IMG/VR virus record: IMGVR_UViG_3300020165_000007
Location: 124,001 to 188,000 of that record
Length of the DNA: 64,000 nt
Direction: 5' to 3' (one strand)
Of this stretch, positions 3,089 to 63,756 are shown piece after piece (positions within the stretch are counted from its first letter, which is position 1; the number at the start of each line of letters is the position of its first letter). Under the pieces are notes generated by a model. That model had not been told where the DNA came from. It saw only the letters and a program-made list of their open reading frames with translations, and made no database searches. A program made the position numbers and the translations under genes.

Positions 3089-3335
3089 CTTTATCTATTT
3101 TTTTATAATCAAACTTTTTACCTATTTCTTTATTAAAAAAACTTCCTTGTGATTCTGCCATTCTAAACTTAGTAAAGATAGAGTGAGGCACTTCACTATA
3201 TTCATATTGTATCTCACCTTTAAACGTCACTAAAAGTTTTTGTGTCGACGTATCATACTCCACAATCTTGACTGTTGAAGAGTCAATCTCACAGATTATC
3301 TTCTTACCTAATATTCTTTCTGTTTTAATCGACAT
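3081..3335 (-). CDS. KTSC domain protein
   Basis: SSTVKIVEYD...LLVTF...YEYSEVP...AESQGSFFNKEI pattern. Confidence 0.85.
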   Translation of the reverse strand: MSIKTERILGKKIICEIDSSTVKIVEYDTSTQKLLVTFKGEIQYEYSEVPHSIFTKFRMAESQGSFFNKEIGKKFDYKKIDKDG

Positions 3336-3834
3336 TACTATTGGATATTAATATATAAGAAATAAAATCGTTGTCTTCTCCCATTGTGAGCCTTTGAACC
3401 TTGTTTAAAAATCCACTAACCTTAAAGTCCTCATTACTTATTCTTAAATCTTCCGCCGCCGCTATTTCAGCATTATTCCTTGCCTTTTTCTTTGCAATTT
3501 CACGGTCCGTTGAGTCTGCAACACCAAAATATAAAGTTTCACCATTAACGTCTATTTTACCTTCTGATTTATTCGTGTCTCGAACATCCTGAATAATTTC
3601 ATCAATGGGTTTATTGTTATACTTTTTTACTTCTACTTCTACTTCTTCTTCATCACCGTCAAGTTTATCTTTGATATTATCGACAGTGTTTTTAATCGCC
3701 TCTTTACCTTTTTGGAAACCTTTCTTTATACCATCTCTTACACCTCTAAAAATTCCTTGTTCATCAAGCTCAGATTCGTTAATACCCATTAACTCACGAT
3801 TACGTTTTACTTCATTCAATATATCCTTATTCAT
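3325..3834 (-). CDS. Hypothetical protein with NEVxRxxxLM leader
   Basis: MNKDILNEVKRNRELMGINE; TATTTATA motif upstream. Confidence 0.7.
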   Translation of the reverse strand: MNKDILNEVKRNRELMGINESELDEQGIFRGVRDGIKKGFQKGKEAIKNTVDNIKDKLDGDEEEVEVEVKKYNNKPIDEIIQDVRDTNKSEGKIDVNGETLYFGVADSTDREIAKKKARNNAEIAAAEDLRISNEDFKVSGFLNKVQRLTMGEDNDFISYILISNSNVD

Positions 3835-3867
3835 GACAATATTTTACTATAAATACTTCTATTAATA

Positions 3868-3898
3868 AAAAACCCCTCACTTTTGATGAGGGGGTTTT
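3868..3898. terminator. Intrinsic terminator hairpin
   Basis: aaaacccctca...tgagggggtttt directly downstream of the 3900..4343 gene. Confidence 0.7.
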
Positions 3899-3899
3899 A

Positions 3900-4343
3900 T
3901 TAAGAGTTAAGTTTTTTAAGTTTATCCCTATATTTTATCGAAGATTCAAAATCCTGAGATTTTATAGACTCATCTAATTTAGTTTTAATTTCCTCAATCT
4001 TTTCTTTATTCGACTCAATTTTTTTGATTTGGTCTCGTATTTTAGCGGCTGTCTCATAATCTTGTATTTCTACCGCATCTGATAATTGGGTTTTTAAAGT
4101 AAAAGTTTCATCTGTTTCTACAGTTGTTGGTTCATCCGTATATTGATATAACGTTGTGACTTGATATGTACCATCATCAGAAATAAATGTTTCTTTTTTC
4201 CATTTACCGTTTTTATCATCTCCGTGTTCTACATTTTTTTTACCTTTAATATATAAAGGGTTTGATTTATATGACCCAATCCCGTCAAAAAGAGAGTCAA
4301 AATCTGAAAATAAGTCATTAAAATTAAAATTTCTACGTAACAT
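3900..4343 (-). CDS. Protein with two C-terminal UVR (UvrB/C) coiled-coil motifs, candidate ClpC adaptor
   Basis: LSDAVEIQDYETAAKIRDQIK and LDESIKSQDFESSIKYRDKLK; N-terminus resembles sHSP-type FNDLFSDFDSLF; divergent from clpC. Confidence 0.7.
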   Translation of the reverse strand: MLRRNFNFNDLFSDFDSLFDGIGSYKSNPLYIKGKKNVEHGDDKNGKWKKETFISDDGTYQVTTLYQYTDEPTTVETDETFTLKTQLSDAVEIQDYETAAKIRDQIKKIESNKEKIEEIKTKLDESIKSQDFESSIKYRDKLKKLNS

Positions 4344-4522
4344 TTTGTTTTTTTATTATTAGTTTATTAAATTTACATTTTTATAGTTAATATCGTACCA
4401 ACATATTAAATTAACTCTAAAACTGACATTATGTCAGGTAAAGTTTAAATGATATGTCACAATGTCAACACTTGATTTAATGGTATAATATATACTATAT
4501 TTGTATAAAATTATTTAAGATT

Positions 4523-7679: not shown

Positions 7680-9538
7680 AACGGGTCAAAAAGTGTGTAG
7701 TTGTTCAACAATTTAATTATTGTTGTCAACTTAGCACTACCTTTTTTTATTTCATTATCTTTATTAATTATTTCAAAATTAATTTTAGAGTTTTTTGGGT
7801 TAACCCCTGTAAATATTATAGAATCTTCACTTTCTGACGATTTAATTGCGTGAGGAGTATTAAGACCAAATTTATTATTTATATACTTTAATATTCTTCT
7901 ATACTCATTAACGTCTGACACTACATTATCATCAGATTCGACATCCGATAAAACATTTTCCAACAGATTTGTCATATCACTGTTAAACGAGTCATTAAAC
8001 ACATCCAAATCCTGATATTCATTTACACTATCCATAAAGTATGTGTCTAAGTCAATATTTTGTTGGATTACGTTCTCCAACACTTGCTCTGTAGACAAGT
8101 CTTTATTGTAATCTAAATTATCCTCGTAGATATCAATAAGTTTATCAATACTGATTTTATATTGACCAAAACAACCTTCATCGTCAACCTTTGTTAATCC
8201 TATTTCATCATAAAGATTACATATTTCATCTTCAATATATTTTATTACACCTTGGTGTATAGACCTGTCCTCGGCTTCGGAATACAAATAACCAAAATCT
8301 TCATATAATTTTGGTAATTTATTTTCTATAAATTTCGATACTTTTACGTCCCAATCACCGTCAGGTTTAATTTCACTACCATCAAACGCCTCTAACAACT
8401 CAGGTTCTATTATCTCAACAATAGAACGTAATATATCTATATGTTCAGGTGTTAATACATAAAGTGGGTAACCTTCCATCATATCGTCATTAAATCTTGA
8501 TGTCTCATAAAAAAAATCTCCATTAGGGTTTTCATATGACCATAGATAATAACCTATCGCATCTTCACCGACCTCATCCTCCATAAAGTCCAAATAATTC
8601 TTAAGTTCATTACTGAAATTAAAAATTGCGTTCTCACCATCAAACCTATCAAAGAAGTGAGATGTTAATGATTCATACATAGATGTCTTAGGGTTATTTT
8701 TTACTTTCTTTAGAGTTTCGTAGTCATCCCCACGTTCCGTCAGTTTATTAATCTCTTCCTTTATTGGTGCAAATCTTTCTAATAAAAAACTAAATTTTTC
8801 CCCGTGGTCCTGTTGATTGTATACCTCAGGTGTGCCGTTACCATGAGGTACAAGTAATGCCATTTTACCGTATGTTCTGTCTGAAGATTTTTTATCTATA
8901 ATGTAATATAGTTTACCTCTTGATGTATATCTGTTAAAATAGTCGTCGTTATCAGTACTGGTGGTACACCATTTAGTACTTGCTCCGTAGTAACATGATG
9001 ATTTATGTGATAATGGACGTATTATTAAAAATCTATCGTTTTCATAAACTCTATCTACTTCTTTTTTTACTTCTTTTTCAGTCCTTATCTCATCTAAATA
9101 ATCTTCGTACTTATTAACAAAACGAAATAAATCGTGAATGGTATCAAACGAGGTAATGTCTTTTGGTTTTGACCTTATCTTTTTTTCTGTACTTTCACTA
9201 CTAAAATTTCCTTCTATATTTAAGATATTAAACATATTATCAACCTTTTCAGGTGATAATCTTTCAACAATATCATGATACTTTTTAATATTGACCCATA
9301 TAATACTTGCGACTGAAATTGGGTCCCCTCCTCCTACAACTGAAGAAGTGGGTTTATTAATTTCATCTATAAATTTTTTAACACCCCATTCAGAATACTT
9401 TTTAGTTAAGCTTGGGTCGTTATTTATAATTATTTCGGCATATTTTATCGCCTCGTCACCTAACGGTTCAAGTTGATTTCGGAACTTATCTATTATACGC
9501 TCCTTTTTACCTTCTAATAATAGAGTTATAAACTTCAT
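7676..9538 (-). CDS. Large hypothetical protein with a G-x-x-T-K-W-C motif domain (possibly PcfJ-like)
   Basis: SCYYGASTKWCTTS...YFNRY...LYYIIDK; leader MKFITLLLEG. Confidence 0.6.
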   Translation of the reverse strand: MKFITLLLEGKKERIIDKFRNQLEPLGDEAIKYAEIIINNDPSLTKKYSEWGVKKFIDEINKPTSSVVGGGDPISVASIIWVNIKKYHDIVERLSPEKVDNMFNILNIEGNFSSESTEKKIRSKPKDITSFDTIHDLFRFVNKYEDYLDEIRTEKEVKKEVDRVYENDRFLIIRPLSHKSSCYYGASTKWCTTSTDNDDYFNRYTSRGKLYYIIDKKSSDRTYGKMALLVPHGNGTPEVYNQQDHGEKFSFLLERFAPIKEEINKLTERGDDYETLKKVKNNPKTSMYESLTSHFFDRFDGENAIFNFSNELKNYLDFMEDEVGEDAIGYYLWSYENPNGDFFYETSRFNDDMMEGYPLYVLTPEHIDILRSIVEIIEPELLEAFDGSEIKPDGDWDVKVSKFIENKLPKLYEDFGYLYSEAEDRSIHQGVIKYIEDEICNLYDEIGLTKVDDEGCFGQYKISIDKLIDIYEDNLDYNKDLSTEQVLENVIQQNIDLDTYFMDSVNEYQDLDVFNDSFNSDMTNLLENVLSDVESDDNVVSDVNEYRRILKYINNKFGLNTPHAIKSSESEDSIIFTGVNPKNSKINFEIINKDNEIKKGSAKLTTIIKLLNNYTLFDPF

Positions 9539-10962
9539 TAGTCATATGCTGCACATCCTATACCACCACTGTCTTCAAAAAATCCGACACCACCACCGCT
9601 CTTAATAAAATTAAAAATCTTACGGTTTCTCCCTCCTGTTGGTTGTGTATCACTTGTTATTTTAATATCCCATTCACCAATTTTATCATCAGTACCAGGT
9701 TCACTCTTTTCTGTATCATAATCAAATTTAACAGCCAATTGTATTATACAATATTTATACTGTTCATATTCATTTGGTGAACTGTGTGGTTCTTGCCCAT
9801 TAAATGTTCTGTCACCCTCTTGTTTAAATGAATTAGGGTCACCACCACCATCAGAAAATTGATTTGGACTTGGTGGATTTGGTCCTGATGAACCGTCACC
9901 ATTTCTACCATTAGAATTTAAAGTGACATTTACTGTACTTATGTCGGGTACTAAAGAACTTAATTCATTAACTATGTAACTATATACACTTTCAGCTCTC
10001 TCTTGAGAAAGTTCTTTAAAATTCATTTGCTGAGCCTCTCCTGTATTTCTGTATCTTGACGCTGATGTCGCAATTACAAATGGGTAGTTTTCACCGTCTA
10101 CTTTATTCGCCACTGAAACTTTAGCATCTGGAAATTGTTTTAGAAAATCGGTAATATCACCTTTAAATTTTTTAGTCCACTCAACGACGCCTTGACCCAC
10201 TCTTGTTGAGTTGTTAGGGAATGGTTCACCTTCAGTTTTCTTGTCTATTGAGTGATTAACTTTAACCGCGGGTATTACAGTTTCATCTTTTTCTTCTTTT
10301 GATAACTTACCAGGTATTAGACGTATTGATTTAATATTTTTTCTACATTCACCTATATCAGGAGTACTTTCATCTTTCTTTTCAGGGTATTTTTTAGTAC
10401 ACCAATCGATAAAATATTGAATGAACCCTTCTTTATTTTCTTCTGTCATAGGAGGAACATCGGCACCTGATTGTCTTTTGTCTTTTCCTTTTACACCCTT
10501 ACTACCAGTTTTACAAGCGTTAAGTGATGACTCATTAAAGTCCGGATTTAACGAATCTTCGCCGAGAGGGAATCCGAATTTTACTTGACCTAAACGGTCA
10601 CCGTTTTGGTCTTCAATATTTCTTAACTCTTTTACAGAGTTACGATATTGGCTTTCATCTTTAAAATATGATTTAGGGATGTAATTGTAACTACTGTATA
10701 GATATTGTCCATCAACACCTCTTCTTGTTGTTGTTTTTTCCGGTAACTTTTCAGACTCTAATTCTGAAACAGGGAATCTATATTTGAAATAATATCTTGG
10801 TGAACAACTGAAATCATCACCAGCACTTTCCCAATAAATTTTACTCTTTTCATCTAATAATGAGACAAACACTCTTTCTATATTGTCAGTTTGTTCTAAA
10901 ACTAACTCCAACCCCATAATTTGTCTCATGCGGTTAACTTCATTTATAATATTACGCTTCAT
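9538..10962 (-). CDS. Leader-bearing protein with OmpA-C-like segment
   Basis: MKRNIINEVNRMRQIMGL; NFKELSQERAESVYSYI resembles the N..LS..RA..V motif. Confidence 0.55.
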   Translation of the reverse strand: MKRNIINEVNRMRQIMGLELVLEQTDNIERVFVSLLDEKSKIYWESAGDDFSCSPRYYFKYRFPVSELESEKLPEKTTTRRGVDGQYLYSSYNYIPKSYFKDESQYRNSVKELRNIEDQNGDRLGQVKFGFPLGEDSLNPDFNESSLNACKTGSKGVKGKDKRQSGADVPPMTEENKEGFIQYFIDWCTKKYPEKKDESTPDIGECRKNIKSIRLIPGKLSKEEKDETVIPAVKVNHSIDKKTEGEPFPNNSTRVGQGVVEWTKKFKGDITDFLKQFPDAKVSVANKVDGENYPFVIATSASRYRNTGEAQQMNFKELSQERAESVYSYIVNELSSLVPDISTVNVTLNSNGRNGDGSSGPNPPSPNQFSDGGGDPNSFKQEGDRTFNGQEPHSSPNEYEQYKYCIIQLAVKFDYDTEKSEPGTDDKIGEWDIKITSDTQPTGGRNRKIFNFIKSGGGVGFFEDSGGIGCAAYD

Positions 10963-17395: not shown

Positions 17396-18798
17396 TTTTC
17401 TTTGGGTTTCCACGCATTTATTGATTCTGTGAATTCCTTACTATTAACTCTCACTCTTTCATAAATATCTGAGTTTTCAGGTTTTTTAAGTTTAAAACCT
17501 TTTTTTTTTAAGTTTTCTAAAAATTCCTTCTGAGACTTCGTAAATTCGTTTGTAAGACCTTCCCCATTTAGTAATGACTGTAAACCTTTCTTTTCTTTAC
17601 CCTTCATAACCTCTTCAAAAGGTTGTTCTTTTTTCATCGATTGATTATGTGTGTTGATATAACTATCTCTTTGTATTTCCTCTTTTTCTCCCCCTCCAAA
17701 TTCAACTTCAGGTATCTTATCACCACCGACTATCTTAAAATCTCTATAATCAGGACCCTCATTATTAGTAATGGTAAAATATATTATACCACCGTCCAAT
17801 AATTTACCTAATCCATTCATCTGAGAATTAAAAGGAAGTTCAATATTTGCATTATTATAGTAAGAACCCAATCTAACGACAGGTTCTCCCGTTTTTTTAT
17901 CTTCACCTTTAGCGACTACTACTGACCTAATAAATGCAATATCTTCAGGATATTTTTTCATTAAATCCATAAATTCTTTATTTATTTCTTCACGGTCTTT
18001 ATCTGTAAAAACTACTTTTTGTTTTCCTTTGTCATTTGCAGTATAAAAATTAAATTCTTTTAACTTTTCATCTATTTTTTCTGGTATTGAATTTTCCATT
18101 TCATTTTCTTTTAATACGTCTTTTAACCCTTCATTAACTTTATTTGTACACCAATTAGAATCTGAAAATTCTTGCCATGAACCACTACTCGGCGGGTCTA
18201 TAAAACCCCATTTTCCACCTCTTTCTTCTATCGGTAACGGTATATTTTTTCTACCTGTTTGTGAATCAGCAAAAAAGACAATTCTCTCATCTTCGTATTG
18301 ACTGTTTGGTTCTCTTTGAACGAATATTAAAGGCCAAACTCTTCCACAAGGTATACCTTTCAAGTAATCGACCACATCTCTAAATTGTTGATTTACAGTT
18401 GAGCTTACACCGCTTTTACCTAAATTTAATTTCTCTTTTTTTAACTCTCTACCACTTTTTTGTCTTGCGGGTGGTGATGGCGGTGTTCCTCCTGGGTTAG
18501 GTTGTGTTGTCGAGCCTGTTGTAGGAGATGGCGTAGTACTACCAGTAGGAGGAGGTGTTGTACTTATCTTTTTAGTGTAGTACGCTTTTGGTGGCATTGG
18601 AGGACCTGTGACAGTATCATCTTGATATAATTTATAATCTGAAATGTTATCACCGTTAGATGTGATTTTGTTTTTTAAATTTGGTTCATTATCCGGTCCT
18701 TCCCATCCTGCACCAGAAGGTGTGCCACTTTTTTTTTCAGTTTGTCCCCAACTAGTGGATTGTTCGTTTAGTATTATTTTATTTGACATTATATTCAT
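17392..18798 (-). CDS. Multidomain protein with P/T-rich linker and a domain shared with the M23 peptidase
   Basis: KIILNEQ leader; CGRVWP...WGFID...WQEFSDSNWCTNK segment. Confidence 0.7.
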   Translation of the reverse strand: MNIMSNKIILNEQSTSWGQTEKKSGTPSGAGWEGPDNEPNLKNKITSNGDNISDYKLYQDDTVTGPPMPPKAYYTKKISTTPPPTGSTTPSPTTGSTTQPNPGGTPPSPPARQKSGRELKKEKLNLGKSGVSSTVNQQFRDVVDYLKGIPCGRVWPLIFVQREPNSQYEDERIVFFADSQTGRKNIPLPIEERGGKWGFIDPPSSGSWQEFSDSNWCTNKVNEGLKDVLKENEMENSIPEKIDEKLKEFNFYTANDKGKQKVVFTDKDREEINKEFMDLMKKYPEDIAFIRSVVVAKGEDKKTGEPVVRLGSYYNNANIELPFNSQMNGLGKLLDGGIIYFTITNNEGPDYRDFKIVGGDKIPEVEFGGGEKEEIQRDSYINTHNQSMKKEQPFEEVMKGKEKKGLQSLLNGEGLTNEFTKSQKEFLENLKKKGFKLKKPENSDIYERVRVNSKEFTESINAWKPKEK

Positions 18799-20651
18799 TT
18801 TGATTTAAAATCACCATTATCATATACATAATAAGTATCAGTTCCATTACCTTTTCTTGACACTACATACCATGTTTTACCACCGTCCTCACCTGCTTTT
18901 TTCGCAGATAAGTAATTATATACATCCTCACTTAAATTATCCCTTACGAATGATTTGAAACTATCTTCCTCATTCTTATACGTAACAATCTCGGCAGATG
19001 GTAGAAGATTACGGACCTTATTTACTATTTCCATAATTATTCCATCAAATTCACTCATGTCGTACTTTCCTTGTGAGGCTGTTTCTATAAATGCATCAAC
19101 TATAGAATAACCCATACTGTCCTGAACGCTACCTAAACCTCCAGGTACAAGCCTTTCAATAATATTAACCATAGTTCCAACAAAGCTATTAGGGTCATCT
19201 TCCCCTTTCTGTCTAAGAACATCAAAAAGAACTCCAACTCTTTCGTAGGCCCATTCACTTAATCCTTGTTTCCATATTGTATTAAAATCAATTTTAAAAT
19301 TATTTAAATCCGTATCAAACATATCGGAAAGCCCGTCTAATAATGAGTTCCAACCAGACTCAATTAAACCTCTCAGAATATCAAATACAAATATAATAAC
19401 CGATTGTGCAAACCAACCTACAAAATAACCAACAAGTGATTGTGCCAAATAAACTAATGCATATTTCAACTTTTTACCTCCAGTTTCTCCTGCGGATGTC
19501 CTAATTAAACCCAAATACTGCTTATTTAAACCTGCAAATTGATTTGTAAGCATAAATTGACCTACTGACGTTCTAGGGTCAATTAATGATTTTACGGCCT
19601 CCATTCTTTGACCTTTAGTTAATAATTGTTTTACTGTTAATAATAATTCACCTGAAAATGACTTCATAACGTCTCCCATTATTTCTCCCACACCCTCTCC
19701 GGACTTCTCCCAAGTGTCATTAAAAATACTAAAAAACGGTATTTCACCATCCCTAATTAAATTTGTTATTTCAGAATCTAAACCTGCATCGGCAAGAACT
19801 TCTGCGGCCGCTCCGTCTTTTTTAATTTCTAACTGGTTTAATAATCTTGTTATTGCAACTGCATAAGCTTCTGTAATTTCTTTAATTTTTTTATCTGAAT
19901 TTTGTTGACTTTTGGCAATTGCGACATCAGTTATGTAACCCGCATTTAATTCCTTAATTTCCTGTTTTACCTTATCAAAACTTTTTACAAACAATGTAAA
20001 GAAATCTTGAATAAATAATGTTGGAGTTTTATCATCAATAACTTTTCTGAGCTTTCTCATTTGTCTCTTACTTAGTTTAGTAGGGGCTACACCTGATAAA
20101 GTATCTACAAAACTACTTGGTTTATTAACGTATATATCTAATTGTTTTTTTACAGTATCAAAAATCCCATTTACATTAATAGGTTTTTGTGGTGAGTCAC
20201 CAACAACACGATTTAATGCCGTTACTAACTCGGTACCGGGTTTCTTCATTCCTTTTCTTAATTTTTCTAAAAATTCTCTCTCACTCATACTATTCTTTCT
20301 TTGGATATCCTTTAAAAATCCTTTATAAAATTCTAATGCAAGTTCATCGTCGTCATTTATAAGTTTACCCAATAGAGTTTTTTCAGTTTCACCCATTTCG
20401 GATACTCTACCATTAAAATCTTCTAAAATATAAATAAGACTATCAAAATTTTCTCTTTTGAACGTTGTACCACCTATTTCTATTTCTAAAAAATCACTTT
20501 TTTTAAGTGCCTTATTGACATATTTTAATATGTTATCGTATACACTGCTACCAATACTTTCTTTTAATATCGTTTTAGGTAAAGACATAATTTCCTTCAT
20601 CCTATGTATTTCAATAAGAATATTAGGGTTAGTTAAATGTAATAGGTCCAT
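18795..20651 (-). CDS. Large helical protein with a hydrophobic segment
   Basis: Leader ILIEIHRMKEIMSL...ILKE; hydrophobic YALVYLAQSLVGYFVGWFAQSVIIFVF. Confidence 0.7.
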   Translation of the reverse strand: MDLLHLTNPNILIEIHRMKEIMSLPKTILKESIGSSVYDNILKYVNKALKKSDFLEIEIGGTTFKRENFDSLIYILEDFNGRVSEMGETEKTLLGKLINDDDELALEFYKGFLKDIQRKNSMSEREFLEKLRKGMKKPGTELVTALNRVVGDSPQKPINVNGIFDTVKKQLDIYVNKPSSFVDTLSGVAPTKLSKRQMRKLRKVIDDKTPTLFIQDFFTLFVKSFDKVKQEIKELNAGYITDVAIAKSQQNSDKKIKEITEAYAVAITRLLNQLEIKKDGAAAEVLADAGLDSEITNLIRDGEIPFFSIFNDTWEKSGEGVGEIMGDVMKSFSGELLLTVKQLLTKGQRMEAVKSLIDPRTSVGQFMLTNQFAGLNKQYLGLIRTSAGETGGKKLKYALVYLAQSLVGYFVGWFAQSVIIFVFDILRGLIESGWNSLLDGLSDMFDTDLNNFKIDFNTIWKQGLSEWAYERVGVLFDVLRQKGEDDPNSFVGTMVNIIERLVPGGLGSVQDSMGYSIVDAFIETASQGKYDMSEFDGIIMEIVNKVRNLLPSAEIVTYKNEEDSFKSFVRDNLSEDVYNYLSAKKAGEDGGKTWYVVSRKGNGTDTYYVYDNGDFKSK

Positions 20652-25008: not shown

Positions 25009-25529
25009 TCTAGAAGGTTCTTAACCTGTTCTATATTCTTAATGAATTTTTCTGGGTTATCTATCGCCCATTGTTTAACAGACTCAGGTAGGGAAGATTT
25101 TTTTAGTTCCTGAAGTACTATTTTAACCTTATCCTTACCTATAGACTCATTTATTTCGTTACTAACCATTACGTCACCTAACATACTAAACAGCTTATGT
25201 TTTAGTTGTGGAGTTGGAGCAACAAACGTAATCTCAAAACCGTTATCGTCAGCCCATCGAATTAGTTCGTCTCCATTTAAAAATTGTTGTCTTTTTTGTG
25301 GAAATTTATCTACAAGTTTAGATGGAGAAGCTACTACCGAAACTATTTTTAAGGTGGGTGTAATAATTATTGCAATTTTTTGCTCATCCATACCAAAAAA
25401 AACTTGTTTAGTTAAAAATATTCTACCTAAAAGTTTAAGAATAAAGTCTTCATAAGAACTTTTCTCTCTTTCAGGTTTATTCGGAACATTAAATGAGCCG
25501 GATTCGTTAAGATATTTTTTATCTGCCAT
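25005..25529 (-). CDS. Hypothetical protein
   Basis: MADKKYLNES start; TATTTATA motif upstream. Confidence 0.7.
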   Translation of the reverse strand: MADKKYLNESGSFNVPNKPEREKSSYEDFILKLLGRIFLTKQVFFGMDEQKIAIIITPTLKIVSVVASPSKLVDKFPQKRQQFLNGDELIRWADDNGFEITFVAPTPQLKHKLFSMLGDVMVSNEINESIGKDKVKIVLQELKKSSLPESVKQWAIDNPEKFIKNIEQVKNLLD

Positions 25530-54934: not shown

Positions 54935-55174
54935 ATGGGTCATATTAGAAAAAATATTAAAAGGGTTTTAAAAGAGTACGATAAAGAGGAATTATTTGAC
55001 TACACACCAAATTTTTCCGCGGATGAATTACTCAAGTATATAGAATCAGAATGGGACGTAGAGATGTTGAGTTTAGTTAACTCAAAAATAAATGAGAGGA
55101 TTGATTTCTTAAACCGTATTGCTGACATGAGTGCCAAGAAAGAAGTTAAAGGTTTTAAAAGATATGAAGATTAA
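54935..55174 (+). CDS. Small protein with IKRVLKE leader
   Basis: MGHIRKNIKRVLKE; GTATTTATA upstream. Confidence 0.7.
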   Translation: MGHIRKNIKRVLKEYDKEELFDYTPNFSADELLKYIESEWDVEMLSLVNSKINERIDFLNRIADMSAKKEVKGFKRYED

Positions 55175-56087
55175 ATTAATCGATATACTATTAGAAGAAG
55201 TTACTGAGTCTCAACTACTACCGTCACCAATCGGACCTACTAGTGAAACTTCTTCGTTTGGTTCTCGTTCTATCGGTGGAGTAAGGGGTCAACATAACGG
55301 TATAGATTTACACTCACCTGTGGGTACTCAGATACTTAATCCGGCTAGTGGTAGAGTTATAACAGCAAAAAAAGTCGATGAGACATGGAATGAAGTACTT
55401 ATTAGAACAGAAAACAAACCTAATGGTAATGATAGGTGTGGTTCTCGTGTTGTCATAGAACATACATCAGGAATACTAAACGGTCTAAAAACTATTTACT
55501 GTCATTTGTCAGAAATAAATGTGGGTAAGGGTGATGTTATTGAAGAAGGTCAATTAATTGGTCTTACAGGTGGTAAACGTAATAGTAAAGGGTCAGGTAG
55601 AACTATCGGTCCACACTTACATTTAGGGGTTAAAAATAATAATGAACCTTTAGACCCTAAAAACTACTTTTCATTCAAACGGGGAGGTCTTGGAGTGTCA
55701 TCCGTACAAAGTAATAGTACAAATACAGGAACCACTAAAAGTTCACCTATAATACCTTCGGAGTACATTAAAAATAATTTAAAAAAGAAGGCCATAGGTA
55801 AAAATAAAGTTGAAGTAAATAATCAACTTAAAGACCTTAAAAATTACCTTTTCTACGATATTAAGTGTGCAAGAGCGTTTCCTGTAATATATGTACAATG
55901 GGAACCTAACCCACAAAATGAACCTGAACGGGTTGTATTATTTGGGGATTTGCAAGATGGTACACCTTATCAAGTGATTCCTGTAGAAAAAAGAGGTGGT
56001 GAGTGGGGATTTATTGATTCTTCTGTAGGTGAATGGCAAGAATTTTCAGAATCTAATTGGTGTACGAATAAGTACAGACTTAAGTAA
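55164..56087 (+). CDS. M23-family peptidoglycan endopeptidase with novel C-terminal domain
   Basis: HNGID, YCHL and GPHLH motifs; start MKIKLIDILLEE. Confidence 0.88.
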   Translation: MKIKLIDILLEEVTESQLLPSPIGPTSETSSFGSRSIGGVRGQHNGIDLHSPVGTQILNPASGRVITAKKVDETWNEVLIRTENKPNGNDRCGSRVVIEHTSGILNGLKTIYCHLSEINVGKGDVIEEGQLIGLTGGKRNSKGSGRTIGPHLHLGVKNNNEPLDPKNYFSFKRGGLGVSSVQSNSTNTGTTKSSPIIPSEYIKNNLKKKAIGKNKVEVNNQLKDLKNYLFYDIKCARAFPVIYVQWEPNPQNEPERVVLFGDLQDGTPYQVIPVEKRGGEWGFIDSSVGEWQEFSESNWCTNKYRLK

Positions 56088-58239: not shown

Positions 58240-58576
58240 TACAAAACTTATTTAAATCAATTTTTAGTGTTTCTAACTCATTTTCATCGACAATACTACC
58301 AGGTACTAAATTGTAACCATCATTTCTTGTTAATTTTTTAGAACTACACCTATATGTTATTGAATGTGATTTATTACCCTTACTCACTAAGTCTGCACTT
58401 ATCAAATCACCCTCTCCTACGATATTTTCTAATTCCAATCTTCCGTCAAATTGTACATCGAGTCCTTTTTGAAATCCCACGTCATAACCTGTTTTAGCAA
58501 AATTAATAACTTGCTCATTTAGGTTATAAAGACCCCTAATTTTACTCTTTTCTAACTCAGTAATCGTAAACTTCAT
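58232..58576 (-). CDS. Hypothetical protein with ITExEKxxI...LNEQ leader
   Basis: MKFTITELEKSKIRGLYNLNEQ. Confidence 0.7.
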   Translation of the reverse strand: MKFTITELEKSKIRGLYNLNEQVINFAKTGYDVGFQKGLDVQFDGRLELENIVGEGDLISADLVSKGNKSHSITYRCSSKKLTRNDGYNLVPGSIVDENELETLKIDLNKFCNV

Positions 58577-58588
58577 ATATTATAAATA

Positions 58589-58984
58589 TTACCAACCTAT
58601 TAAACGGCTAACAGGTAATTTAAAAGTTTTTTCAAACCATTTTTTATATAATTCCTCAAATTTATTACCTAAATACCCTATTTCCGTTGAAAAATAATCT
58701 TTTGAGTAATAGAGTAGTGGAAAATCTCCTTCCATAAACTCGTTATTTGTAAAAGTAACGTTTTCTAAGTATTTTGGGTCATATAAGGCGAACCAGTCAT
58801 TAATCTCAGGTAATGAATCGACATCGTCTTTAAAAAACTGTAAAACGTCCTTTTTACCGTCAATAAACTTATTAAATTCACCAACATCACTTAAATCCCA
58901 CACATTTGTTACGGGTTTTTCGTGTTTTTTCATTAATTTGTCAAAAGCTGAAACTAATTGTGACTGTTCTATCAGTATTTCCAT
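58589..58984 (-). CDS. Hypothetical protein
   Basis: MEILIEQSQL leader; C-terminal KWFEKTFKLPV. Confidence 0.7.
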   Translation of the reverse strand: MEILIEQSQLVSAFDKLMKKHEKPVTNVWDLSDVGEFNKFIDGKKDVLQFFKDDVDSLPEINDWFALYDPKYLENVTFTNNEFMEGDFPLLYYSKDYFSTEIGYLGNKFEELYKKWFEKTFKLPVSRLIGW

Positions 58985-59746: not shown

Positions 59747-60775
59747 TTATACCCCTCTATTGTCCATTACTGACCACACTTTTAGAGTCATATCACCTCT
59801 TAAAAGTGCCGCAATTAGTCTTCCTACCCCCCAATATAACTCTCCATTAACCATTGTTGACGGTTCTGCAGTTTTTGGGTCATAATTAATGTATTCTTCG
59901 TATCTTTCGGGATTTTGGTCGAATATTTCACCAGATTTTAGACCAAATTTACTTCCAATTTCGGTATCTGAGATGTGTTGTACGTCTTCTAACTCCAGTC
60001 TATACTTTGGGTTGGTCTTAATCATCTCCATAACATGTCTTGGAGTCCTTCCGATTGACTCTTTTACTGAATCTGTCTGTAATAAGTTCAATAAATTCAT
60101 AGTTATTGGGTAATTTGGGTCTAGCTCCCAATTTTTTATCAAATTTATGTCACTTTTTGACCCTTCAGGTCTTTCATCGATGATTTCTCTCTGAAATTCA
60201 TCAGGAAAACGGTCTAAAATCTCGACCCACTTGTTATTTCCCTGTTCTATGGCTTTTTTTTTGTAACTTTCGAGGTTAATTTCAGACATTTTACTCTCAG
60301 AAATAACGTTCATCATATTTTTTATACGATTTACATCCTCAGATATCTGTTCCATATCAATTATATTCCAATCACCCTCTCGGTCCAGCCAGTCGACATC
60401 AACCTCTTCTCCTTCATCATAACAAGGGTCACAATTATTTAAGGCGTTTTTTAAGTCATACTCATCATACGCTTCAACCTCATCTTGGTACGTTCTTCTT
60501 ACTACCTCAGTACCTGAAAATTCAGTTCTTATCTTATATTTTTTGAGTTTTGGTATGATAATATCTTTATCTTCCATGTTACCCCAATCATCAAAAGTTT
60601 CTTTATTTTGAAACAATAATGCTGTTAAAAAATCGTGGTTTCCCACAATTGATGTTAAAGGGTGTGGTATCGGATAGTCGTAAATGTCGTAGTTTGAACT
60701 GTTCTCCCAAGGGTCTTTGTCCTTATACAATAATTTAGCAATACTCAGTACCTTATTAAAGTGACTTTTATCCAT
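59747..60775 (-). CDS. Two-module protein with an internal leader motif and a ParB/Srx-like C-terminus
   Basis: Start MDKSHF; internal ISEDVNRIKNMMNVISE; ELYWGVGRLIAALLRG. Confidence 0.6.
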   Translation of the reverse strand: MDKSHFNKVLSIAKLLYKDKDPWENSSNYDIYDYPIPHPLTSIVGNHDFLTALLFQNKETFDDWGNMEDKDIIIPKLKKYKIRTEFSGTEVVRRTYQDEVEAYDEYDLKNALNNCDPCYDEGEEVDVDWLDREGDWNIIDMEQISEDVNRIKNMMNVISESKMSEINLESYKKKAIEQGNNKWVEILDRFPDEFQREIIDERPEGSKSDINLIKNWELDPNYPITMNLLNLLQTDSVKESIGRTPRHVMEMIKTNPKYRLELEDVQHISDTEIGSKFGLKSGEIFDQNPERYEEYINYDPKTAEPSTMVNGELYWGVGRLIAALLRGDMTLKVWSVMDNRGV

Positions 60776-60810
60776 AACAGTAAAAAAATTCCCTATTAGA
60801 AGGATTTTTA

Positions 60811-61062
60811 TTAATCTTCGTCTTCGTCTTCGTCTTCTTCGTGACCACCTTCTAAGTCCAAGACTAATTTCTGACCACTGCAAGAACACTCACCATCTTT
60901 TAATAACATTGCGATATGGTCCAAAGTGATTTCAATTGCATCACCTTCTTCTTCGTCTTCTACTTCCATATCCATGTCCATTTCGACTTCTCCTTGCTCT
61001 GCAAGAACTCTTTTTACAATATTTTCTAAATCTGATTCCTTAAGTTTAATAATTTTTTTCAT
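60811..61062 (-). CDS. Small acidic protein with KLKESDL leader
   Basis: MKKIIKLKESDLENIVKRVLAEQ. Confidence 0.75.
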   Translation of the reverse strand: MKKIIKLKESDLENIVKRVLAEQGEVEMDMDMEVEDEEEGDAIEITLDHIAMLLKDGECSCSGQKLVLDLEGGHEEDEDEDED

Positions 61063-61487
61063 GATGTAAGTATTTTATTTAGTGCTAATATGTTATTTAA
61101 ATTATTTTTATAATTCTGAATCGCCTGTGCCATCTCATTAGACATTCCATCAACATTCGGAACAACTCTATCGATATTTTTCAAAGCATTTTTAACATCA
61201 TTATCCATACTTCTAACTAATGATTTAAGTTCTGCCTTTACCTTTTCTTCCTTTGGGTTTTGACCTTTTGGTAGTTCTTTTGGTTTTCCTGTTTTTACGT
61301 AACTTTTCTTAGTATCTCTAAAAGATTTTCTGTTTTGTTGTCTTGCTTTTACTGCTCCAACACCTCCGGCAACTTTTGCTTTTAATCTATCAACAACCTG
61401 TTCGGTAGCCTCTTCTTCTTGCTCCGCAAGAACTCTTTTTATGATATTTTCTAAATCTGATTCCTTAAGTTTTATAATTTTTGCCAT
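61059..61487 (-). CDS. Protein with KLKESDL leader
   Basis: MAKIIKLKESDLENIIKRVLAEQ. Confidence 0.75.
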   Translation of the reverse strand: MAKIIKLKESDLENIIKRVLAEQEEEATEQVVDRLKAKVAGGVGAVKARQQNRKSFRDTKKSYVKTGKPKELPKGQNPKEEKVKAELKSLVRSMDNDVKNALKNIDRVVPNVDGMSNEMAQAIQNYKNNLNNILALNKILTS

Positions 61488-61578
61488 AATAGTATTTTTA
61501 TTATAAATATAAGACTTATGTAAAAACTTTAAAGTTTTTTGGCGATTACAGAACCTTTACATTACTTTATACATTTTA

Positions 61579-62331
61579 TTATGATTCGAAATGTAATTTT
61601 ATACAAGACTCATGGAATGGGAAGAACTTATTCATCCTGTTTTTCACCGATTTTTCTACTCTATCAATCACCCACGAAGCATCCTGAAAATAACGAAGTG
61701 TGACACTATGTGGTTCCGCGTGTATGTCAAAATCTTTACCCATATCCTCATAAAATACAAATGAGTGTTCACTCACAGGGCTTATTACCATATGTACTAT
61801 TAAATCACACCCTTCTTTTTCTGAAGATACTATCTCCACACTATCGACTTGCCATACACCGTTTACGGACTCATTTACATCGGTTTCACCATCCCAATAT
61901 ATTCTATTGTCTTCAACATAGTTGTTTTCAAATGCATCTTTATTTAGTTTATCTCTTATAAGATTCTCAAGTTTATTGAATTCTACAGACTCATTAAATA
62001 AACCAAATTCACTTTTATAATACCCTTTGTTACCATCCAACGATATCTCATCATCAATCTCTTTCATTTTATTTTCTAAGTATTCACTAACATCAGATGG
62101 AAGATTTTCATCGTCTATCATACCATACTTTTTCAAAGAATTTCTAATATTACTAAACTCATTTTGAATTTTGTAATGTTCCGACCATATAGAATCCGGA
62201 GCGTCTGTAACTCTAAGTATTTCAGATTCAGTAAATCCGTTTTCTAAAAATAAAGACCTTAATTTTCTATATAATACGTATAGATTACTATCTAAGTCAG
62301 TTTGTATAATAAATTTTAGTGATGGTGACAT
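61579..62331 (-). CDS. Hypothetical protein
   Basis: 250 aa ORF with internal LFNES. Confidence 0.7.
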   Translation of the reverse strand: MSPSLKFIIQTDLDSNLYVLYRKLRSLFLENGFTESEILRVTDAPDSIWSEHYKIQNEFSNIRNSLKKYGMIDDENLPSDVSEYLENKMKEIDDEISLDGNKGYYKSEFGLFNESVEFNKLENLIRDKLNKDAFENNYVEDNRIYWDGETDVNESVNGVWQVDSVEIVSSEKEGCDLIVHMVISPVSEHSFVFYEDMGKDFDIHAEPHSVTLRYFQDASWVIDRVEKSVKNRMNKFFPFHESCIKLHFES

Positions 62332-62336
62332 ATTAA

Positions 62337-62750
62337 TTATTCATTACTTAATACTACAGGTAAAATAGCCGTTAATACGGTGGTTAATATTGTGACATTA
62401 CGTGTGTTTCTTAATCTTTTTATTTTATCCTCTTTAGATACAATTTCTAAAGATTGGTAAGTAGTCTTATCAATTAAACCTTGATTTATGAACATCAAAG
62501 AATCTGTAGTCGTTTTAAATTTATCAATTAATATATTGTTCTGTTCTACAATACTATTCAAATCATTTACTTGAGATAAAAGGGAGTCTACTTCCATTTT
62601 ACACAAATCATACTTAATTAAATCACTAGCGATTTGTTTGGCTTGGATTGTTGGAATGCAAACTAAGTCTTCACTCACTGTATCGCTTTGCGAAAAAATC
62701 GGAAAGCTCATTATGAGACATATTGTCGATACCATTAAGTGTCTTATCAT
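62337..62750 (-). CDS. Signal-peptide coiled-coil protein with hydrophobic C-terminus (spanin-like partner)
   Basis: Overlaps the 3' end of the upstream TM/coiled-coil gene. Confidence 0.55.
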   Translation of the reverse strand: MIRHLMVSTICLIMSFPIFSQSDTVSEDLVCIPTIQAKQIASDLIKYDLCKMEVDSLLSQVNDLNSIVEQNNILIDKFKTTTDSLMFINQGLIDKTTYQSLEIVSKEDKIKRLRNTRNVTILTTVLTAILPVVLSNE

Positions 62751-63048
62751 AATCTTTTTTTAACTTATCTATCTGTTTATTCCTGTTTTGAATTGTAGTG
62801 TTTAAACTATCTACCTTCGACTCGGTTTCAACTAAAGTAACCTCTAAACGTTCTTTTAATTTAGTTGCGTCATCAACTTTATCCTGTAACTTGTCTTTCT
62901 CTTCTTCTAATAAAGAATCAAATCTTTCTTCAGCAGCCATAACAGCCTTATCTACAAAATTTTTAGTCATGGACCAAACCGCAACTCCGCCTAATATACC
63001 TCCTATTAGTAATCCGACTCCTAAGGAAATTAACCTAACATTTTTCAT
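62671..63048 (-). CDS. N-terminal TM coiled-coil protein (i-spanin-like)
   Basis: LGVGLLIGGILGGVAVW followed by a long heptad repeat. Confidence 0.55.
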   Translation of the reverse strand: MKNVRLISLGVGLLIGGILGGVAVWSMTKNFVDKAVMAAEERFDSLLEEEKDKLQDKVDDATKLKERLEVTLVETESKVDSLNTTIQNRNKQIDKLKKDYDKTLNGIDNMSHNELSDFFAKRYSE

Positions 63049-63063
63049 ACTTCACCATATGAT

Positions 63064-63756
63064 TTATGCCTTCATCATCGAGGATGGAAAATCGGGTTTA
63101 GATGGAAAATCAGGTTTGTTAATCTTATCTCTTGGTGGTACTTTACCTCCTTCAAAACATTGTCCTATACCAACACATTGTAGCAAACCTTTTATTTTAT
63201 CTTCATCAATACAGAAATCCTCTTTTAGTCCTCCCATAAACTTAGATATACATCCTTGTACTTTCTCACAGTCCACATTGATACCACCGTCTTTAACTGG
63301 TACAGTACCTATTTGACCACCACCTTTACACTTATCACAAATTTCTTTAGGGATACAACCTAATTCACATAATTTACCTGTAGTTTCAGGTCCGATACCA
63401 CCGTCAACTTTAAGTCCATTTTTTCCTTGAAATACTTCAACAACATCCTTAGTCATACTTCCAAAGATACCATCAACAACTAATGGTTGTAGAGGTTCGA
63501 TACCACATGCGTTTAACGCTTCTTGAAATAACTTAACCAACTCACCTTTAGCACCTCTCTTAAGTTGTCCTTTACCGACCAATACTTGACAAAATTCGTC
63601 AGCAATTGGTAAGTATTTTTTTACAGGTACTTCTTTTTTTGGTGGAGCGTCGGTCATTGGTGGAGATACGACTTTCTCTTGTTCATTTAATAAACCCTTA
63701 TATAGACTCTGTATACTCAGTTTTTCATTTTCGGATAGTATGATTCTTTTTCCCAT
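63064..63756 (-). CDS. Peptidoglycan-binding-domain protein with leader
   Basis: LKRGAKGELVKLFQEAL...VDGIFG...FQGKNGLKVDGGIGPET; leader MGKRIILSENEK...LLNEQ. Confidence 0.8.
   Translation of the reverse strand: MGKRIILSENEKLSIQSLYKGLLNEQEKVVSPPMTDAPPKKEVPVKKYLPIADEFCQVLVGKGQLKRGAKGELVKLFQEALNACGIEPLQPLVVDGIFGSMTKDVVEVFQGKNGLKVDGGIGPETTGKLCELGCIPKEICDKCKGGGQIGTVPVKDGGINVDCEKVQGCISKFMGGLKEDFCIDEDKIKGLLQCVGIGQCFEGGKVPPRDKINKPDFPSKPDFPSSMMKA

What the first reader, a model, noticed from the sequence alone, without database searches (positions are those of the whole stretch)
3325..63756. About 20 unrelated proteins share short leaders ending in [ILV]-x-E: candidate capsid-loading and maturation signal
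Seen: three leader styles recur on dissimilar cargo. (a) ILNEVKRNRELMGINE (3834), IINEVNRMRQIMGL (10962), LIEIHRMKEIMSL (20651), LVEMNRLMNY (22747), LLNEDINRIKTLMSINE (23440). (b) VILTESQF..LLKE (31334), IKLTETQL..IKEQ (32666), IKLKESDL..VLAEQ (61062, 61487), ITELEK..LNEQ (58576), ILSENEK..LNEQ (63756), ILIEQSQL (58984). (c) FITLLLEG (9538), LIDILLEE (55164), IKRVLKE (54935), KIILNEQ (18798). These genes or their operons follow the TATTTAT motif. Established: T4 internal proteins have an N-terminal capsid-targeting peptide removed by the gp21 protease after Glu in [IL]-x-E. Inference: a modular address label loads diverse effectors (M23 peptidase, PG-binding, HExxH, hydrophobic-helix proteins) into the head for injection.
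Basis: partly seen in the sequence, partly recalled or inferred. Interest (0 to 1): 0.82.

Follow-up and report, generated by a model that had tools for sequence, protein, structure and literature searches.

The report
Shared capsid-address leaders on phage proteins
A large uncultured T4-like phage of Bacteroidota puts a few interchangeable 10-30-residue leader peptides, each ending in a T4-protease-type [ILV]-x-E site, on many unrelated late proteins; this is most likely a portable tag for loading them into the capsid, and it recurs in over 2,000 protein clusters from metagenomes.

Summary
Thirteen window genes carry one of three N-terminal leader families: A (NEVNRMRxIMGL...LEQ), B (IKLTESDLxxIVKRVIKEQ) and C (ILSExEKxxIxxLY...LNEQ). 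About six more carry short, weaker ones. Cargo is unrelated except for one pair. [ILV]xEQ is 15-fold enriched in the first 30 residues (p=2e-8). It occurs in 10/38 genes behind the TATTTAT motif and in 0/36 others.

Contigs identical to the window carry a T4 head module 7-12 kb beyond its left end: Portal_T4, a gp21-family Peptidase_S77 protease, an acidic scaffold and a Gp23 capsid protein. The capsid protein's site LINE|A aligns with T4's LTE|A and is invariant in 44 variants.

Orthologous cargo in relatives carries different leaders (A, C, D or a short stub) that always end at [ILV]xE.

A leader-B profile finds 2,043 clusters in 1.84 billion proteins, nearly all at residue 1. No paper, solved structure or deposited phage matched.

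Packaging and cleavage remain inferred. Internal, C-terminal and tandem copies, and Gln after the Glu, are loose ends. Verdict: a new variant of the T4 capsid-targeting-sequence system, confidence about 0.5.

The parts
3757..3834 (-). Leader A on the 169-aa protein 3325-3834: MNKDILNEVKRNRELMGINE-SELDEQ, with INE and LDEQ sites
   Evidence: HMM A 23.6 bits, hit starts at residue 3 of the protein
10891..10962 (-). Leader A on the 474-aa protein 9538-10962. The cargo holds an OmpA/MotB-like peptidoglycan-binding fold. The leader ends in VLEQ.
   Evidence: AF2 leader pLDDT <50 and cargo 75-94; Foldseek OmpA/MotB matches, prob 0.98-1.0
20559..20651 (-). Leader A on the 618-aa protein 18795-20651 (one hydrophobic helix-like segment). 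The leader ends in ILKE.
22667..22747 (-). Leader A (divergent) on the 603-aa protein 20936-22747 (two hydrophobic segments). The leader ends in LSEQ.
   Evidence: (relative L050 carries NIINEELYRMKYL...VISEQ)
23384..23440 (-). Leader A on the 226-aa HExxH protein 22760-23440. The leader ends in INE.
60296..60355 (-). Leader A, newly found. The true start of ORF 59747-60889 is Met179, giving a 202-aa protein that begins MEQISEDVNRIKNMMNVISE.
31334..31393 (+). Leader B on the 212-aa protein 31334-31972 (three hydrophobic segments)
   Evidence: (37.4 bits)
32604..32666 (-). Leader B on the 124-aa protein 32292-32666. The leader ends in IKEQ.
   Evidence: (36.8 bits)
60994..61062 (-). Leader B on the 83-aa very acidic protein 60811-61062. 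The leader ends in LAEQ.
   Evidence: (41.1 bits)
61419..61487 (-). Leader B on the 142-aa basic protein 61059-61487 (cargo pI 10.2). The leader ends in LAEQ.
   Evidence: (38.0 bits)
58511..58576 (-). Leader C on the 114-aa protein 58232-58576. The leader ends in LNEQ.
   Evidence: (32.3 bits)
63679..63756 (-). Leader C on the 230-aa PG_binding_1 protein 63064-63756. The leader ends in LNEQ.
   Evidence: PF01471, 6.8e-14; 28.4 bits
27847..27888 (-). Possible leader C (MSDEERNSILQQHS) if ORF 27034-27954 starts at its third Met. Weak.
   Evidence: 6.6 bits only
54935..54976 (+). Short D-type leader MGHIRKNIKRVLKE on the 79-aa protein 54935-55174. It resembles the second half of leader B.
   Evidence: (D-type IIKKVIKE|A in relatives). 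Not significant on its own.
55164..55208 (+). Short leader MKIKLIDILLEEVTE on the M23 peptidase 55164-56087
   Evidence: (PF01551, 4.9e-20). Not significant on its own.
18760..18798 (-). Short leader MNIMSNKIILNEQ on the 468-aa protein 17392-18798
   Evidence: Not significant on its own.
9512..9538 (-). Short stub MKFITLLLE on the 620-aa protein 7676-9538
   Evidence: Weak.
25500..25529 (-). Short stub MADKKYLNE|S on the 175-aa basic protein 25005-25532, directly behind TATTTAT
   Evidence: Weak.
58964..58984 (-). Short stub MEILIEQ on the 131-aa protein 58589-58984
   Evidence: Weak.
61503..61509 (-). TATTTAT late-promoter-like motif ahead of the 61487/61062/60355 leader-gene run. Equivalent copies on the minus strand: 3849-3855, 10977-10983, 20663-20669, 22753-22759, 23446-23452, 33995-34001, 58582-58588, 58989-58995, 63773-63779. 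Plus-strand copies: 31310-31322 and 54910-54916.
   Evidence: The same motif precedes the portal, core, protease, and scaffold/MCP genes just outside the window.

Best explanation
The leaders are portable prohead-targeting propeptides of a T4-like phage. They correspond to the capsid targeting sequences (CTS) of T4 internal proteins.

Proposed mechanism: late in infection, unrelated proteins are made with a 10-30-residue N-terminal module. The cargo includes peptidoglycan binders, an M23 peptidase, an HExxH protein, basic and acidic small proteins, and large proteins with hydrophobic helices. The module binds the scaffolding core while the prohead assembles. The gp21-family protease then cuts after Glu of [ILV]-x-E, probably at one or both of the two such sites in each leader. 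This frees the cargo inside the head for delivery with the DNA.

Shown here:
- the leaders exist, are specific to the N-terminus and are conserved at the protein level;
- they end in [ILV]-x-E;
- they are exchanged among orthologous cargo;
- they sit behind the motif that also precedes the head genes;
- the genome has a gp21-type protease, and a capsid protein with a conserved I-N-E|A site.

Inferred, not shown: binding to the core, cleavage, presence in virions, and injection.
For: (1) A T4 head module lies in the same genome. Contigs identical to the window over the overlap (0 mismatches) carry TerL, Portal_T4 (8.6e-79), Peptidase_S77, an acidic scaffold-like protein and a Gp23-family MCP. 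The protease is 36% identical to T4 gp21 and keeps the ELNHP and GVSSRG motifs.

(2) The MCP site LINE|A aligns with T4 gp23 LTE|A and with Flavobacterium phage immuto VSE|A. It is invariant in 44 distinct MCP variants and is followed by a variable Ser/Thr-rich stretch.

(3) Leader ends have the same form. [ILV]xEQ is enriched 15-fold in the first 30 residues and is confined to TATTTAT genes. Of 15 [IL]NE[SAGQ] sites in 26 kb of protein, 4 lie in the 246-aa core-like protein next to the portal, 1 is the MCP site and about 6 are N-terminal leader or stub ends.

(4) Natural swaps:
- The basic protein encoded after the MCP has short, D-type or C-type N-termini in different relatives. All end at [ILV]xE followed by A/G/V and then a conserved start.
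- Homologues of 9538-10962 carry A or C leaders, and one a B-like N-terminus. In that alignment the conserved leader columns are M1 and E23 (invariant) and E8, R11, L18 and Q24 (>=90%).

(5) TATTTAT precedes the portal, core, protease and scaffold/MCP genes as well as the leader genes.

(6) Synonymous codons vary freely at conserved leader positions, so selection acts on the peptide.

(7) In the AF2 model the leader is a low-confidence helix that is not confidently placed against the folded cargo.

(8) An 84-aa protein made of leader B plus a poly-Lys tract is encoded about 2 kb from the MCP gene. It resembles the small basic T4 internal proteins.

(9) Several cargo proteins bind or cut peptidoglycan but lack any Sec signal. 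This fits delivery from the virion.

(10) In T4, 10-20-residue propeptides target proteins into the prohead and are removed by gp21. Multiple cuts within one propeptide and C-terminal propeptides are also known there (PMC9026906, PMC5694885).
Against: - There are no proteomic or experimental data. Cleavage and encapsidation are inferred only.
- Leader B also occurs internally, at C-termini and in tandem. Of the 149 best database hits, 22 have several copies and 5 have a C-terminal copy. A simple removable N-terminal propeptide does not explain this.
- The residue after Glu is mostly Gln in B leaders (80 of 142), and leaders A and C also mostly end in EQ. It is Ala at the MCP and basic-protein sites.
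- [ILV]xE is common in Glu/Lys-rich helices: about 2 per 100 residues.
- Amphipathicity of the leaders is mostly not significant.
- The closest cultured relative has a gp21-type protease but none of these leaders. The leaders are therefore not required for T4-type assembly.
- Peptidoglycan-directed cargo could instead sit in the tail or baseplate, where the prohead protease does not act.
Confidence: 0.5

Rival explanations
1. The module is a retained docking or oligomerisation peptide, not a propeptide. It tethers diverse proteins to one hub (in the virion, tail or an intracellular assembly) and stays on the mature protein, working like a very small dockerin.
For: Copies occur at N-termini, internally, at C-termini and in tandem. 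Some 50-residue proteins consist only of two copies. The whole 20-residue module is conserved, not only the [ILV]xE ends. Leader B sits as a linker between two domains in the basic protein encoded after the MCP gene.
Against: Orthologues that replace long leaders with 7-10-residue stubs keep only the [ILV]xE|A boundary. That fits a cleavage site better than a docking helix. The two Glu residues and the Gln are the most conserved leader columns across types A and C. The AF2 model does not place the leader confidently. Docking and later cleavage are not mutually exclusive: that combination is what the T4 CTS does.
Confidence: 0.25
2. The leader is a non-Sec export or release signal. It takes peptidoglycan-directed proteins from the cytoplasm to the periplasm late in infection, as part of lysis or envelope remodelling.
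For: Cargo repeatedly binds or modifies peptidoglycan: PG_binding_1, LysM, YkuD, M23 and an OmpA/MotB-like fold. None has a Sec signal. The genes sit behind the late-type motif.
Against: The leaders are charged and lack a hydrophobic core or a twin-arginine motif. Real signal peptides are present on other window proteins such as 13649, 24499 and 44219. Much of the cargo has no cell-wall link: poly-Lys proteins, acidic proteins and the HExxH protein. No candidate transporter was found next to the leader genes.
Confidence: 0.08
3. The leader is a recognition tag for the phage's own chaperone and protease set (DnaK, a ClpC-like ATPase with a McsA-like partner, ClpP, FKBP). It controls folding or timed degradation of the tagged proteins.
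For: The window encodes HSP70 (1e-253), an FKBP, a ClpB/ClpC-type double AAA+ protein, a UVR-motif protein and ClpP. Hydrophobic cores flanked by basic residues, as in KKIIRL and RIVKRVIK, resemble DnaK-binding motifs; this comparison is from general knowledge and was not tested.
Against: The ClpC-like gene sits behind the host-type TAnnTTTG box, not the late-type motif. This idea does not explain the fixed [ILV]xE boundary or the leader swaps. Two other Gp23-family phage contigs carry the leaders, but whether they encode these chaperones was not checked.
Confidence: 0.07
4. There is no shared function. The similarity reflects gene duplication within one phage, or compositional bias of N-termini in an AT-rich genome.
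For: 61062 and 61487 are adjacent and have nearly identical leaders.
Against: The leader-B profile finds 2,043 clusters at 50% identity, nearly all at residue 1, on unrelated cargo. Shuffles and internal segments give no such similarity. Codons vary while the residues are kept.
Confidence: 0.03

Closest known systems
T4 capsid targeting sequences (the N-terminal propeptides of IPI, IPII, IPIII and Alt, removed by the gp21 prohead protease)
   Same: Both are short N-terminal peptides on unrelated, late-made proteins that end in [LI]-x-E. The phage has a gp21-family protease, gp20 portal, gp23 capsid protein and an acidic scaffold. The capsid protein's maturation site aligns with T4's. Small basic cargo is present. 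In T4, several cuts per propeptide and C-terminal propeptides are also known (PMC9026906, PMC5694885).
   Different: These leaders are mostly longer (19-31 residues in families A-C, versus 10-20) and much more conserved. They form a few families shared across a whole clade and more than 2,000 protein clusters. Each carries two [ILV]xE motifs and is usually followed by Gln. They also occur internally, at C-termini and in tandem. The cargo is rich in peptidoglycan-binding domains. From memory they show no resemblance to the T4 IPIII peptide; this was not tested here.
Propeptides of phiKZ-like giant phages (phiKZ, 201phi2-1, SPN3US), cut by their gp21-related protease
   Same: Many head-internal 'ejection' proteins are processed after Glu at a three-residue motif. 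Diverged paralogues can keep identical N-termini (PMC5694885).
   Different: Those motifs have a small residue at P3 (A/S/G-x-E), and the propeptides are mostly over 100 residues. Here P3 is Ile/Leu/Val, as in T4, and the leaders are short.
Encapsulation peptides of bacterial microcompartments and cargo-loading peptides of encapsulins
   Same: A short, portable terminal peptide followed by a variable linker addresses unrelated cargo to the inside of a protein shell.
   Different: Those peptides are not removed by a protease and serve non-viral shells. No such shell genes turned up among the window proteins that were searched.
Double-glycine (bacteriocin-type) leader peptides
   Same: There is a superficial likeness in the pattern L-S/T-x-x-E-h-x-x-I.
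   Different: There is no Gly-Gly end. No C39 peptidase transporter turned up among the window proteins searched against Pfam. Cargo reaches 618 residues.

Membership tests
T4-type CTS / gp21-processed propeptide system | The genome encodes a gp21-family (Peptidase_S77) prohead protease | tested here: met
   PF03420 on a 240-aa protein 7.3-8.0 kb beyond the window's left end, on contigs identical to the window. BLASTP against T4 gp21 gives 36% identity, E=1e-23, with ELNHP and GVSSRG kept.
T4-type CTS / gp21-processed propeptide system | T4-type prohead: gp20 portal, gp23 capsid protein with an N-terminal propeptide cut after [LI]-x-E, and a scaffolding core | tested here: met
   Portal_T4 8.6e-79. 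Gp23 family. LINE|A aligns with T4 LTE|A and is invariant in 44 variants. The acidic 430-aa protein and the 246-aa protein are dense in [ILV]xE. The cleavage itself is inferred.
T4-type CTS / gp21-processed propeptide system | A short N-terminal peptide on otherwise unrelated proteins, ending in [LI]-x-E | tested here: met
   Internal and C-terminal copies are an added feature.
T4-type CTS / gp21-processed propeptide system | The propeptide is actually removed by the protease | not testable with these tools
   Needs virion or prohead mass spectrometry, or an in vitro cleavage assay.
T4-type CTS / gp21-processed propeptide system | The cargo is inside the capsid, and the peptide suffices to load a foreign protein | not testable with these tools
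   Needs virion proteomics and leader-reporter fusions.
phiKZ/SPN3US-type propeptides | Cleavage motif with a small residue at P3 (A/S/G-x-E) and long propeptides | tested here: not met
   P3 is I/L/V/M in 143 of 145 leader-B copies and at the MCP site. Leaders are 10-30 residues.
Sec, Tat or lipoprotein signal peptides | Hydrophobic core of 10-20 residues after a basic N-terminus (or a twin-arginine motif, or a lipobox) | tested here: not met
   The leader sequences are charged throughout. Typical signal peptides are seen on other window proteins.
Double-glycine leader peptides | Leader ends in Gly-Gly, and a C39 peptidase ABC transporter is present | tested here: not met
   Leaders end in [ILV]xE[QA]. 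No C39 or ABC transporter hit in the Pfam searches of the window proteins that were run.
Type IX secretion signals | C-terminal CTD domain plus an N-terminal Sec signal | tested here: not met
   The window does encode a CHU_C CTD protein and a PorP/SprF protein. The leader proteins have neither a CTD hit nor a Sec signal.

The most novel reading that the evidence does not exclude
The modules are more than disposable propeptides. They form a small docking code in which leader types A/C and B/D address different receptors or layers of the prohead core. Internal, C-terminal and tandem copies cross-link cargo into an ordered, peptidoglycan-directed ejection complex. The protease then releases that complex at the flanking [ILV]xE sites. 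If so, leader type alone would predict which proteins a whole clade of uncultured Bacteroidota phages injects, and in what arrangement. The module would also be a ready-made 20-residue packaging tag.
Probability: 0.2. Interest if true: 0.85.

Novelty: new variant of a known kind. Interest (0 to 1): 0.68.

Why it matters
If the leaders are capsid-loading tags, a simple sequence profile would pick out the packaged and probably injected proteins of a large clade of T4-like phages of marine and other Bacteroidota. This clade is almost entirely uncultured: at least 566 contigs in IMG/VR encode a relative of the query MCP (tblastn E<=1e-3). The best 80 (68-100% identical) were examined here. For most phages such proteins cannot be recognised from sequence, and they are where anti-defence and envelope-breaching functions are expected. 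The strong conservation, the natural leader swaps and the presence of both a short and a long form give a clear experimental handle on how T4-type proheads choose their cargo. They also supply candidate tags for loading foreign proteins into capsids.

Tried and rejected
- The A-like hit at 6609 (M42 peptidase) was rejected. It is part of the peptidase family's own N-terminus and sits behind a host-type promoter.
- Leader alignments A1 and A2 were too divergent for the search for related loci.
- tblastn of a window B leader and of a consensus-like B leader against 50,697 deposited phage genomes found nothing. The 618-aa cargo also found nothing.
- Word-based searches of leader regions returned only close orthologues.
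- A PDB profile search and the ESM Atlas gave nothing usable for the leader.
- 'LTESDL' occurs in no searchable paper, and a topical search found no description.
- Pfam and PHROGs have no model covering the leaders.
- Hydrophobic-moment tests did not support a general 'amphipathic helix' label, except for the B consensus.
- The total TATTTAT count is not above chance. Only its position and orientation are informative.
- Flavobacterium phage immuto, the closest cultured relative (MCP 38.6% identical), has no A, B or C leader in 150 of its 160 kb.
- Context look-ups for P0045 and P0203 gave contigs too short, or without head genes in range.
- ClpP at 52442-53113 was considered as the maturation protease. 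It was set aside because a gp21-type protease lies in the head module.

Full report
**What the window is.** The window has 32% G+C. It carries 12 tRNA genes and genes for HSP70, an FKBP, a ClpC-like ATPase, ClpP and PPK2. It also encodes a type IX secretion cargo (CHU_C domain) and a PorP/SprF protein, and a 1,153-aa virion protein shared with cyanomyoviruses. An exact 40-base pattern and a 100% identical protein place it on IMG/VR contig UViG_3300020165_000007, 270 kb long. No deposited phage is close at the DNA level. Two upstream sequence types are visible. One is the Bacteroidota sigma-A box TAnnTTTG, for example before the ClpC-like gene. The other is TATTTAT, 10-25 nt before many start codons. 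The picture is a large phage of Bacteroidota.

**Checking the observation.** Pairwise ungapped scoring of the first 30 residues of 73 proteins gives six pairs scoring 40 or more. Residues 32-61, C-termini and shuffled N-termini give none. Profiles built from the leaders and run over all stop-to-stop ORFs hit only next to a start Met. This sorts the leaders into three families:
- A: core E-x-N-R-x-K-x-h-M-[GS]-[IL], then h-x-E-Q. Starts at 3834, 10962, 20651, 22747 and 23440, plus 60355, which is the real start of a mis-called ORF.
- B: I-K-L-T-E-S-D-L-x-x-I-V-K-R-V-I-K-E-Q. Starts at 31334, 32666, 61062 and 61487.
- C: I-L-S-E-x-E-K-x-x-I-x-x-L-Y ... L-N-E-Q. Starts at 58576 and 63756, three more just past the window end in L001, and a weak one at 27888.

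An A-like hit on the M42 peptidase is a false positive.

**The shared ending.** The common feature is the end of the leader. [ILV]-x-E-Q occurs 13 times in 3,210 N-terminal positions and 6 times in 22,613 others (OR 15, p=2e-8). It occurs at residues 3-30 in 10 of 38 genes assigned to TATTTAT and in none of 36 others (p=0.001). With leaders removed, only one cargo pair is related.

**Beyond the window.** A 23-position profile of leader B was searched against 1.84 billion representative proteins. It found 2,043 clusters at E<=0.001. Of the 149 best hits, 136 have the motif starting within the first eight residues. The consensus is MKK-[IV]-I-[RK]-LTESDL-x-R-IVKRVIKEQ. After that point the sequences diverge completely. 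Pfam recognises little in the cargo, but what it finds is mostly cell-wall related: PG_binding_1, PG_binding_3, LysM and YkuD. Conserved residues use many synonymous codons, including both Ser codon families, so selection acts on the peptide and not on the RNA. I found no Pfam or PHROG model, no solved structure, no paper, and no match in 50,697 deposited phage genomes.

Contigs that match the window without a single mismatch over the overlap continue past its left end. There they carry, in order:
- a large terminase;
- a T4-type portal (8.6e-79);
- a 246-aa protein dense in [ILV]xE;
- a Peptidase_S77 protein;
- a very acidic scaffold-like protein;
- a Gp23-family major capsid protein.

The protease is 36% identical to T4 gp21 across the catalytic core and keeps the ELNHP and GVSSRG motifs. 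In an alignment with T4 gp23 and the capsid protein of Flavobacterium phage immuto, the T4 maturation site LTE|A lines up with LINE|A here and VSE|A in immuto. Across 80 related loci from IMG/VR, all 44 distinct capsid-protein variants keep LINE|A, and a variable Ser/Thr-rich stretch follows. TATTTAT precedes the portal, core, protease and scaffold/capsid genes, so it is very probably the late promoter. Its total count in the window is not above chance. Its position and orientation are what is biased.

**Natural swap experiments.** There are two.
- The first concerns a basic, Cys-rich protein encoded just after the capsid gene. In different relatives its N-terminus is a 7-10-residue basic stub (MKKNRISE|ATGS), a D-type leader (MDRLNQIIKKVIKE|ATS) or a C-type leader (...SESEKNTILKLHNLLE|ADTT). 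Each ends at [ILV]-x-E followed by Ala/Gly/Val, a Ser/Thr/Gly-rich stretch and then a conserved motif.
- The second concerns homologues of the window protein 9538-10962. They carry leader A when close, leader C when distant, and in one case a B-like N-terminus. MAFFT aligns A and C in register. The leader columns conserved across both types are Met1 and Glu23 (invariant) and Glu8, Arg11, Leu18 and Gln24 (at least 90%). So the two Glu residues that end the two [ILV]xE motifs are among the best-kept positions.

Leaders B and C also co-occur in other genomes. B is present in 32, and C in 13, of the 80 capsid-anchored loci. Both occur on a separate 205-kb contig. A divergent B subfamily lies 8 kb from another Gp23-family gene.

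**Cargo.** In the window the cargo includes:
- a PG_binding_1 protein and an M23 peptidase;
- a protein whose AF2 model matches OmpA/MotB peptidoglycan-binding domains;
- an HExxH protein;
- very basic and very acidic small proteins;
- three proteins with hydrophobic helix-like segments.

None has a Sec signal. In the AF2 model the leader forms two short helices with pLDDT below 50, while the body reaches 75-94. An 84-aa protein near the capsid gene consists of leader B followed by a poly-Lys tract. It recalls the small basic internal proteins of T4.

**What does not fit neatly.**
- Leader B is not only N-terminal. Twenty-two of the 149 best hits have two or three copies, and five have one at the C-terminus. 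Some 50-residue proteins are just two copies. In the basic-protein family the module links two domains.
- The residue after the Glu is mostly Gln, whereas the capsid and basic-protein sites have Ala.
- [ILV]xE is frequent in this proteome.
- The leaders are mostly not significantly amphipathic.
- The closest cultured relative has the protease but not the leaders.
- Nothing here shows cleavage, encapsidation or injection.

**Interpretation.** The best-supported reading is a T4-type capsid targeting system. The leader binds the scaffolding core, and the gp21-family protease removes it at [ILV]-x-E. T4 propeptides of 10-20 residues do this, can be cut more than once, and can also be C-terminal (PMC9026906, PMC5694885). 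I give this about 0.5. The main rival is a retained docking or cross-linking module (0.25), and it could also be part of the same mechanism. A non-Sec export signal for wall-directed proteins and a tag for the phage's DnaK/Clp set are less likely (0.08 and 0.07). Chance or mere paralogy is excluded for families A-C.

**Comparison and novelty.** In mechanism this is filed under the T4 CTS system. The genomic membership features that could be tested are met: the protease family, the head type and the form of the site. The functional features could not be tested. It differs from T4 in several ways. The leaders are longer and highly conserved, form families shared across a whole clade and are freely exchanged. 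They have a two-site architecture ending in E-Q, occur in multiple positions, and carry cargo rich in peptidoglycan binders. It does not fit the phiKZ-type motif, which has a small residue at P3. It also does not fit Sec or Tat signals, double-glycine leaders or type IX signals. I rate it a new variant of a known kind and, as far as the searches reach, undescribed.

Noticed in passing
window 13649-16645 (+) and 23458-24447 (-): The phage encodes a 998-aa protein with a signal peptide and a CHU_C type IX secretion C-terminal domain (4.6e-17). It also encodes a PorP/SprF-type T9SS outer-membrane protein (4e-45). Together they look like a phage-borne secretion cargo and partner pair, and they point to a Bacteroidota host.
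   Followed up: partly
window 3900-4343 (-), 4523-6544 (+), 35494-37374 (+), 37393-37821 (+), 52442-53113 (+): A full protein-quality-control set: a UVR-motif (McsA-like) protein, a ClpB/ClpC-type double AAA+ ATPase, HSP70/DnaK (1e-253), an FKBP isomerase and ClpP (3e-57). PHROGs labels the ClpP as 'head maturation protease', but the real T4-type protease lies elsewhere.
   Followed up: partly
window 39842-42370, 51295-51369, 52336-52421: Twelve tRNA genes, ten of them in one array. The mechanical ORF 52379-53113 (ClpP) overlaps tRNA-Ser, so its true start is probably the ATG at 52442.
   Followed up: partly
window 28685-31270 (-): An 861-aa fusion of DUF4314 with polyphosphate kinase 2 (PPK2, 6.2e-70), sitting behind the late-type TATTTAT motif.
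   Followed up: no
window-wide, e.g. 4495-4522, 20690-20724, 38790-38824, 59220-59255: Two upstream motif classes. TAnnTTTG (the Bacteroidota sigma-A -7 box) precedes 10 genes, including the ClpC-like gene. TATTTAT precedes 24 genes, including most leader genes and the head genes outside the window.
   Followed up: partly
L012:10355-11647 versus L013:10355-11962 (outside the window, left side): The acidic scaffold-like protein is 430 aa in one assembly and 535 aa in another. The difference is in the copy number of a 21-residue repeat (YEANEGKYGGNKGDESRSHRD). The portal also ends in GDLGG repeats.
   Followed up: no
L012:8508-8693 (-) (outside the window): A ribosomal protein S21 gene sits inside the head-gene module, on the opposite strand.
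   Followed up: no
window 17392-18798 (-) and 55164-56087 (+): The 468-aa protein and the M23 peptidase share a ~150-residue region (43% identity, 9e-29) of unknown function. It ends in a motif like WQEFS[DE]SNWCTNK. This is the only cargo similarity among the leader proteins.
   Followed up: no
window 44219-46234 (-), 34002-34847 (-), 51382-51858 (+), 13095-13592 (+), 26211-26852 (+): Other annotated genes: a secreted M43 metallopeptidase, an Amidase_2 (a likely endolysin, with no leader), a pyrimidine-dimer DNA glycosylase, an HNH endonuclease and a dTDP-4-dehydrorhamnose epimerase.
   Followed up: no
L012:14015-14929 (+) and relatives: A conserved basic, Cys-rich domain (EDLAVWFG-KKKPKGS-QPKGPW...CRAAGVAGKMS) is encoded next to the capsid gene throughout the clade. 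It has no Pfam match and could be a DNA-binding internal head protein.
   Followed up: partly
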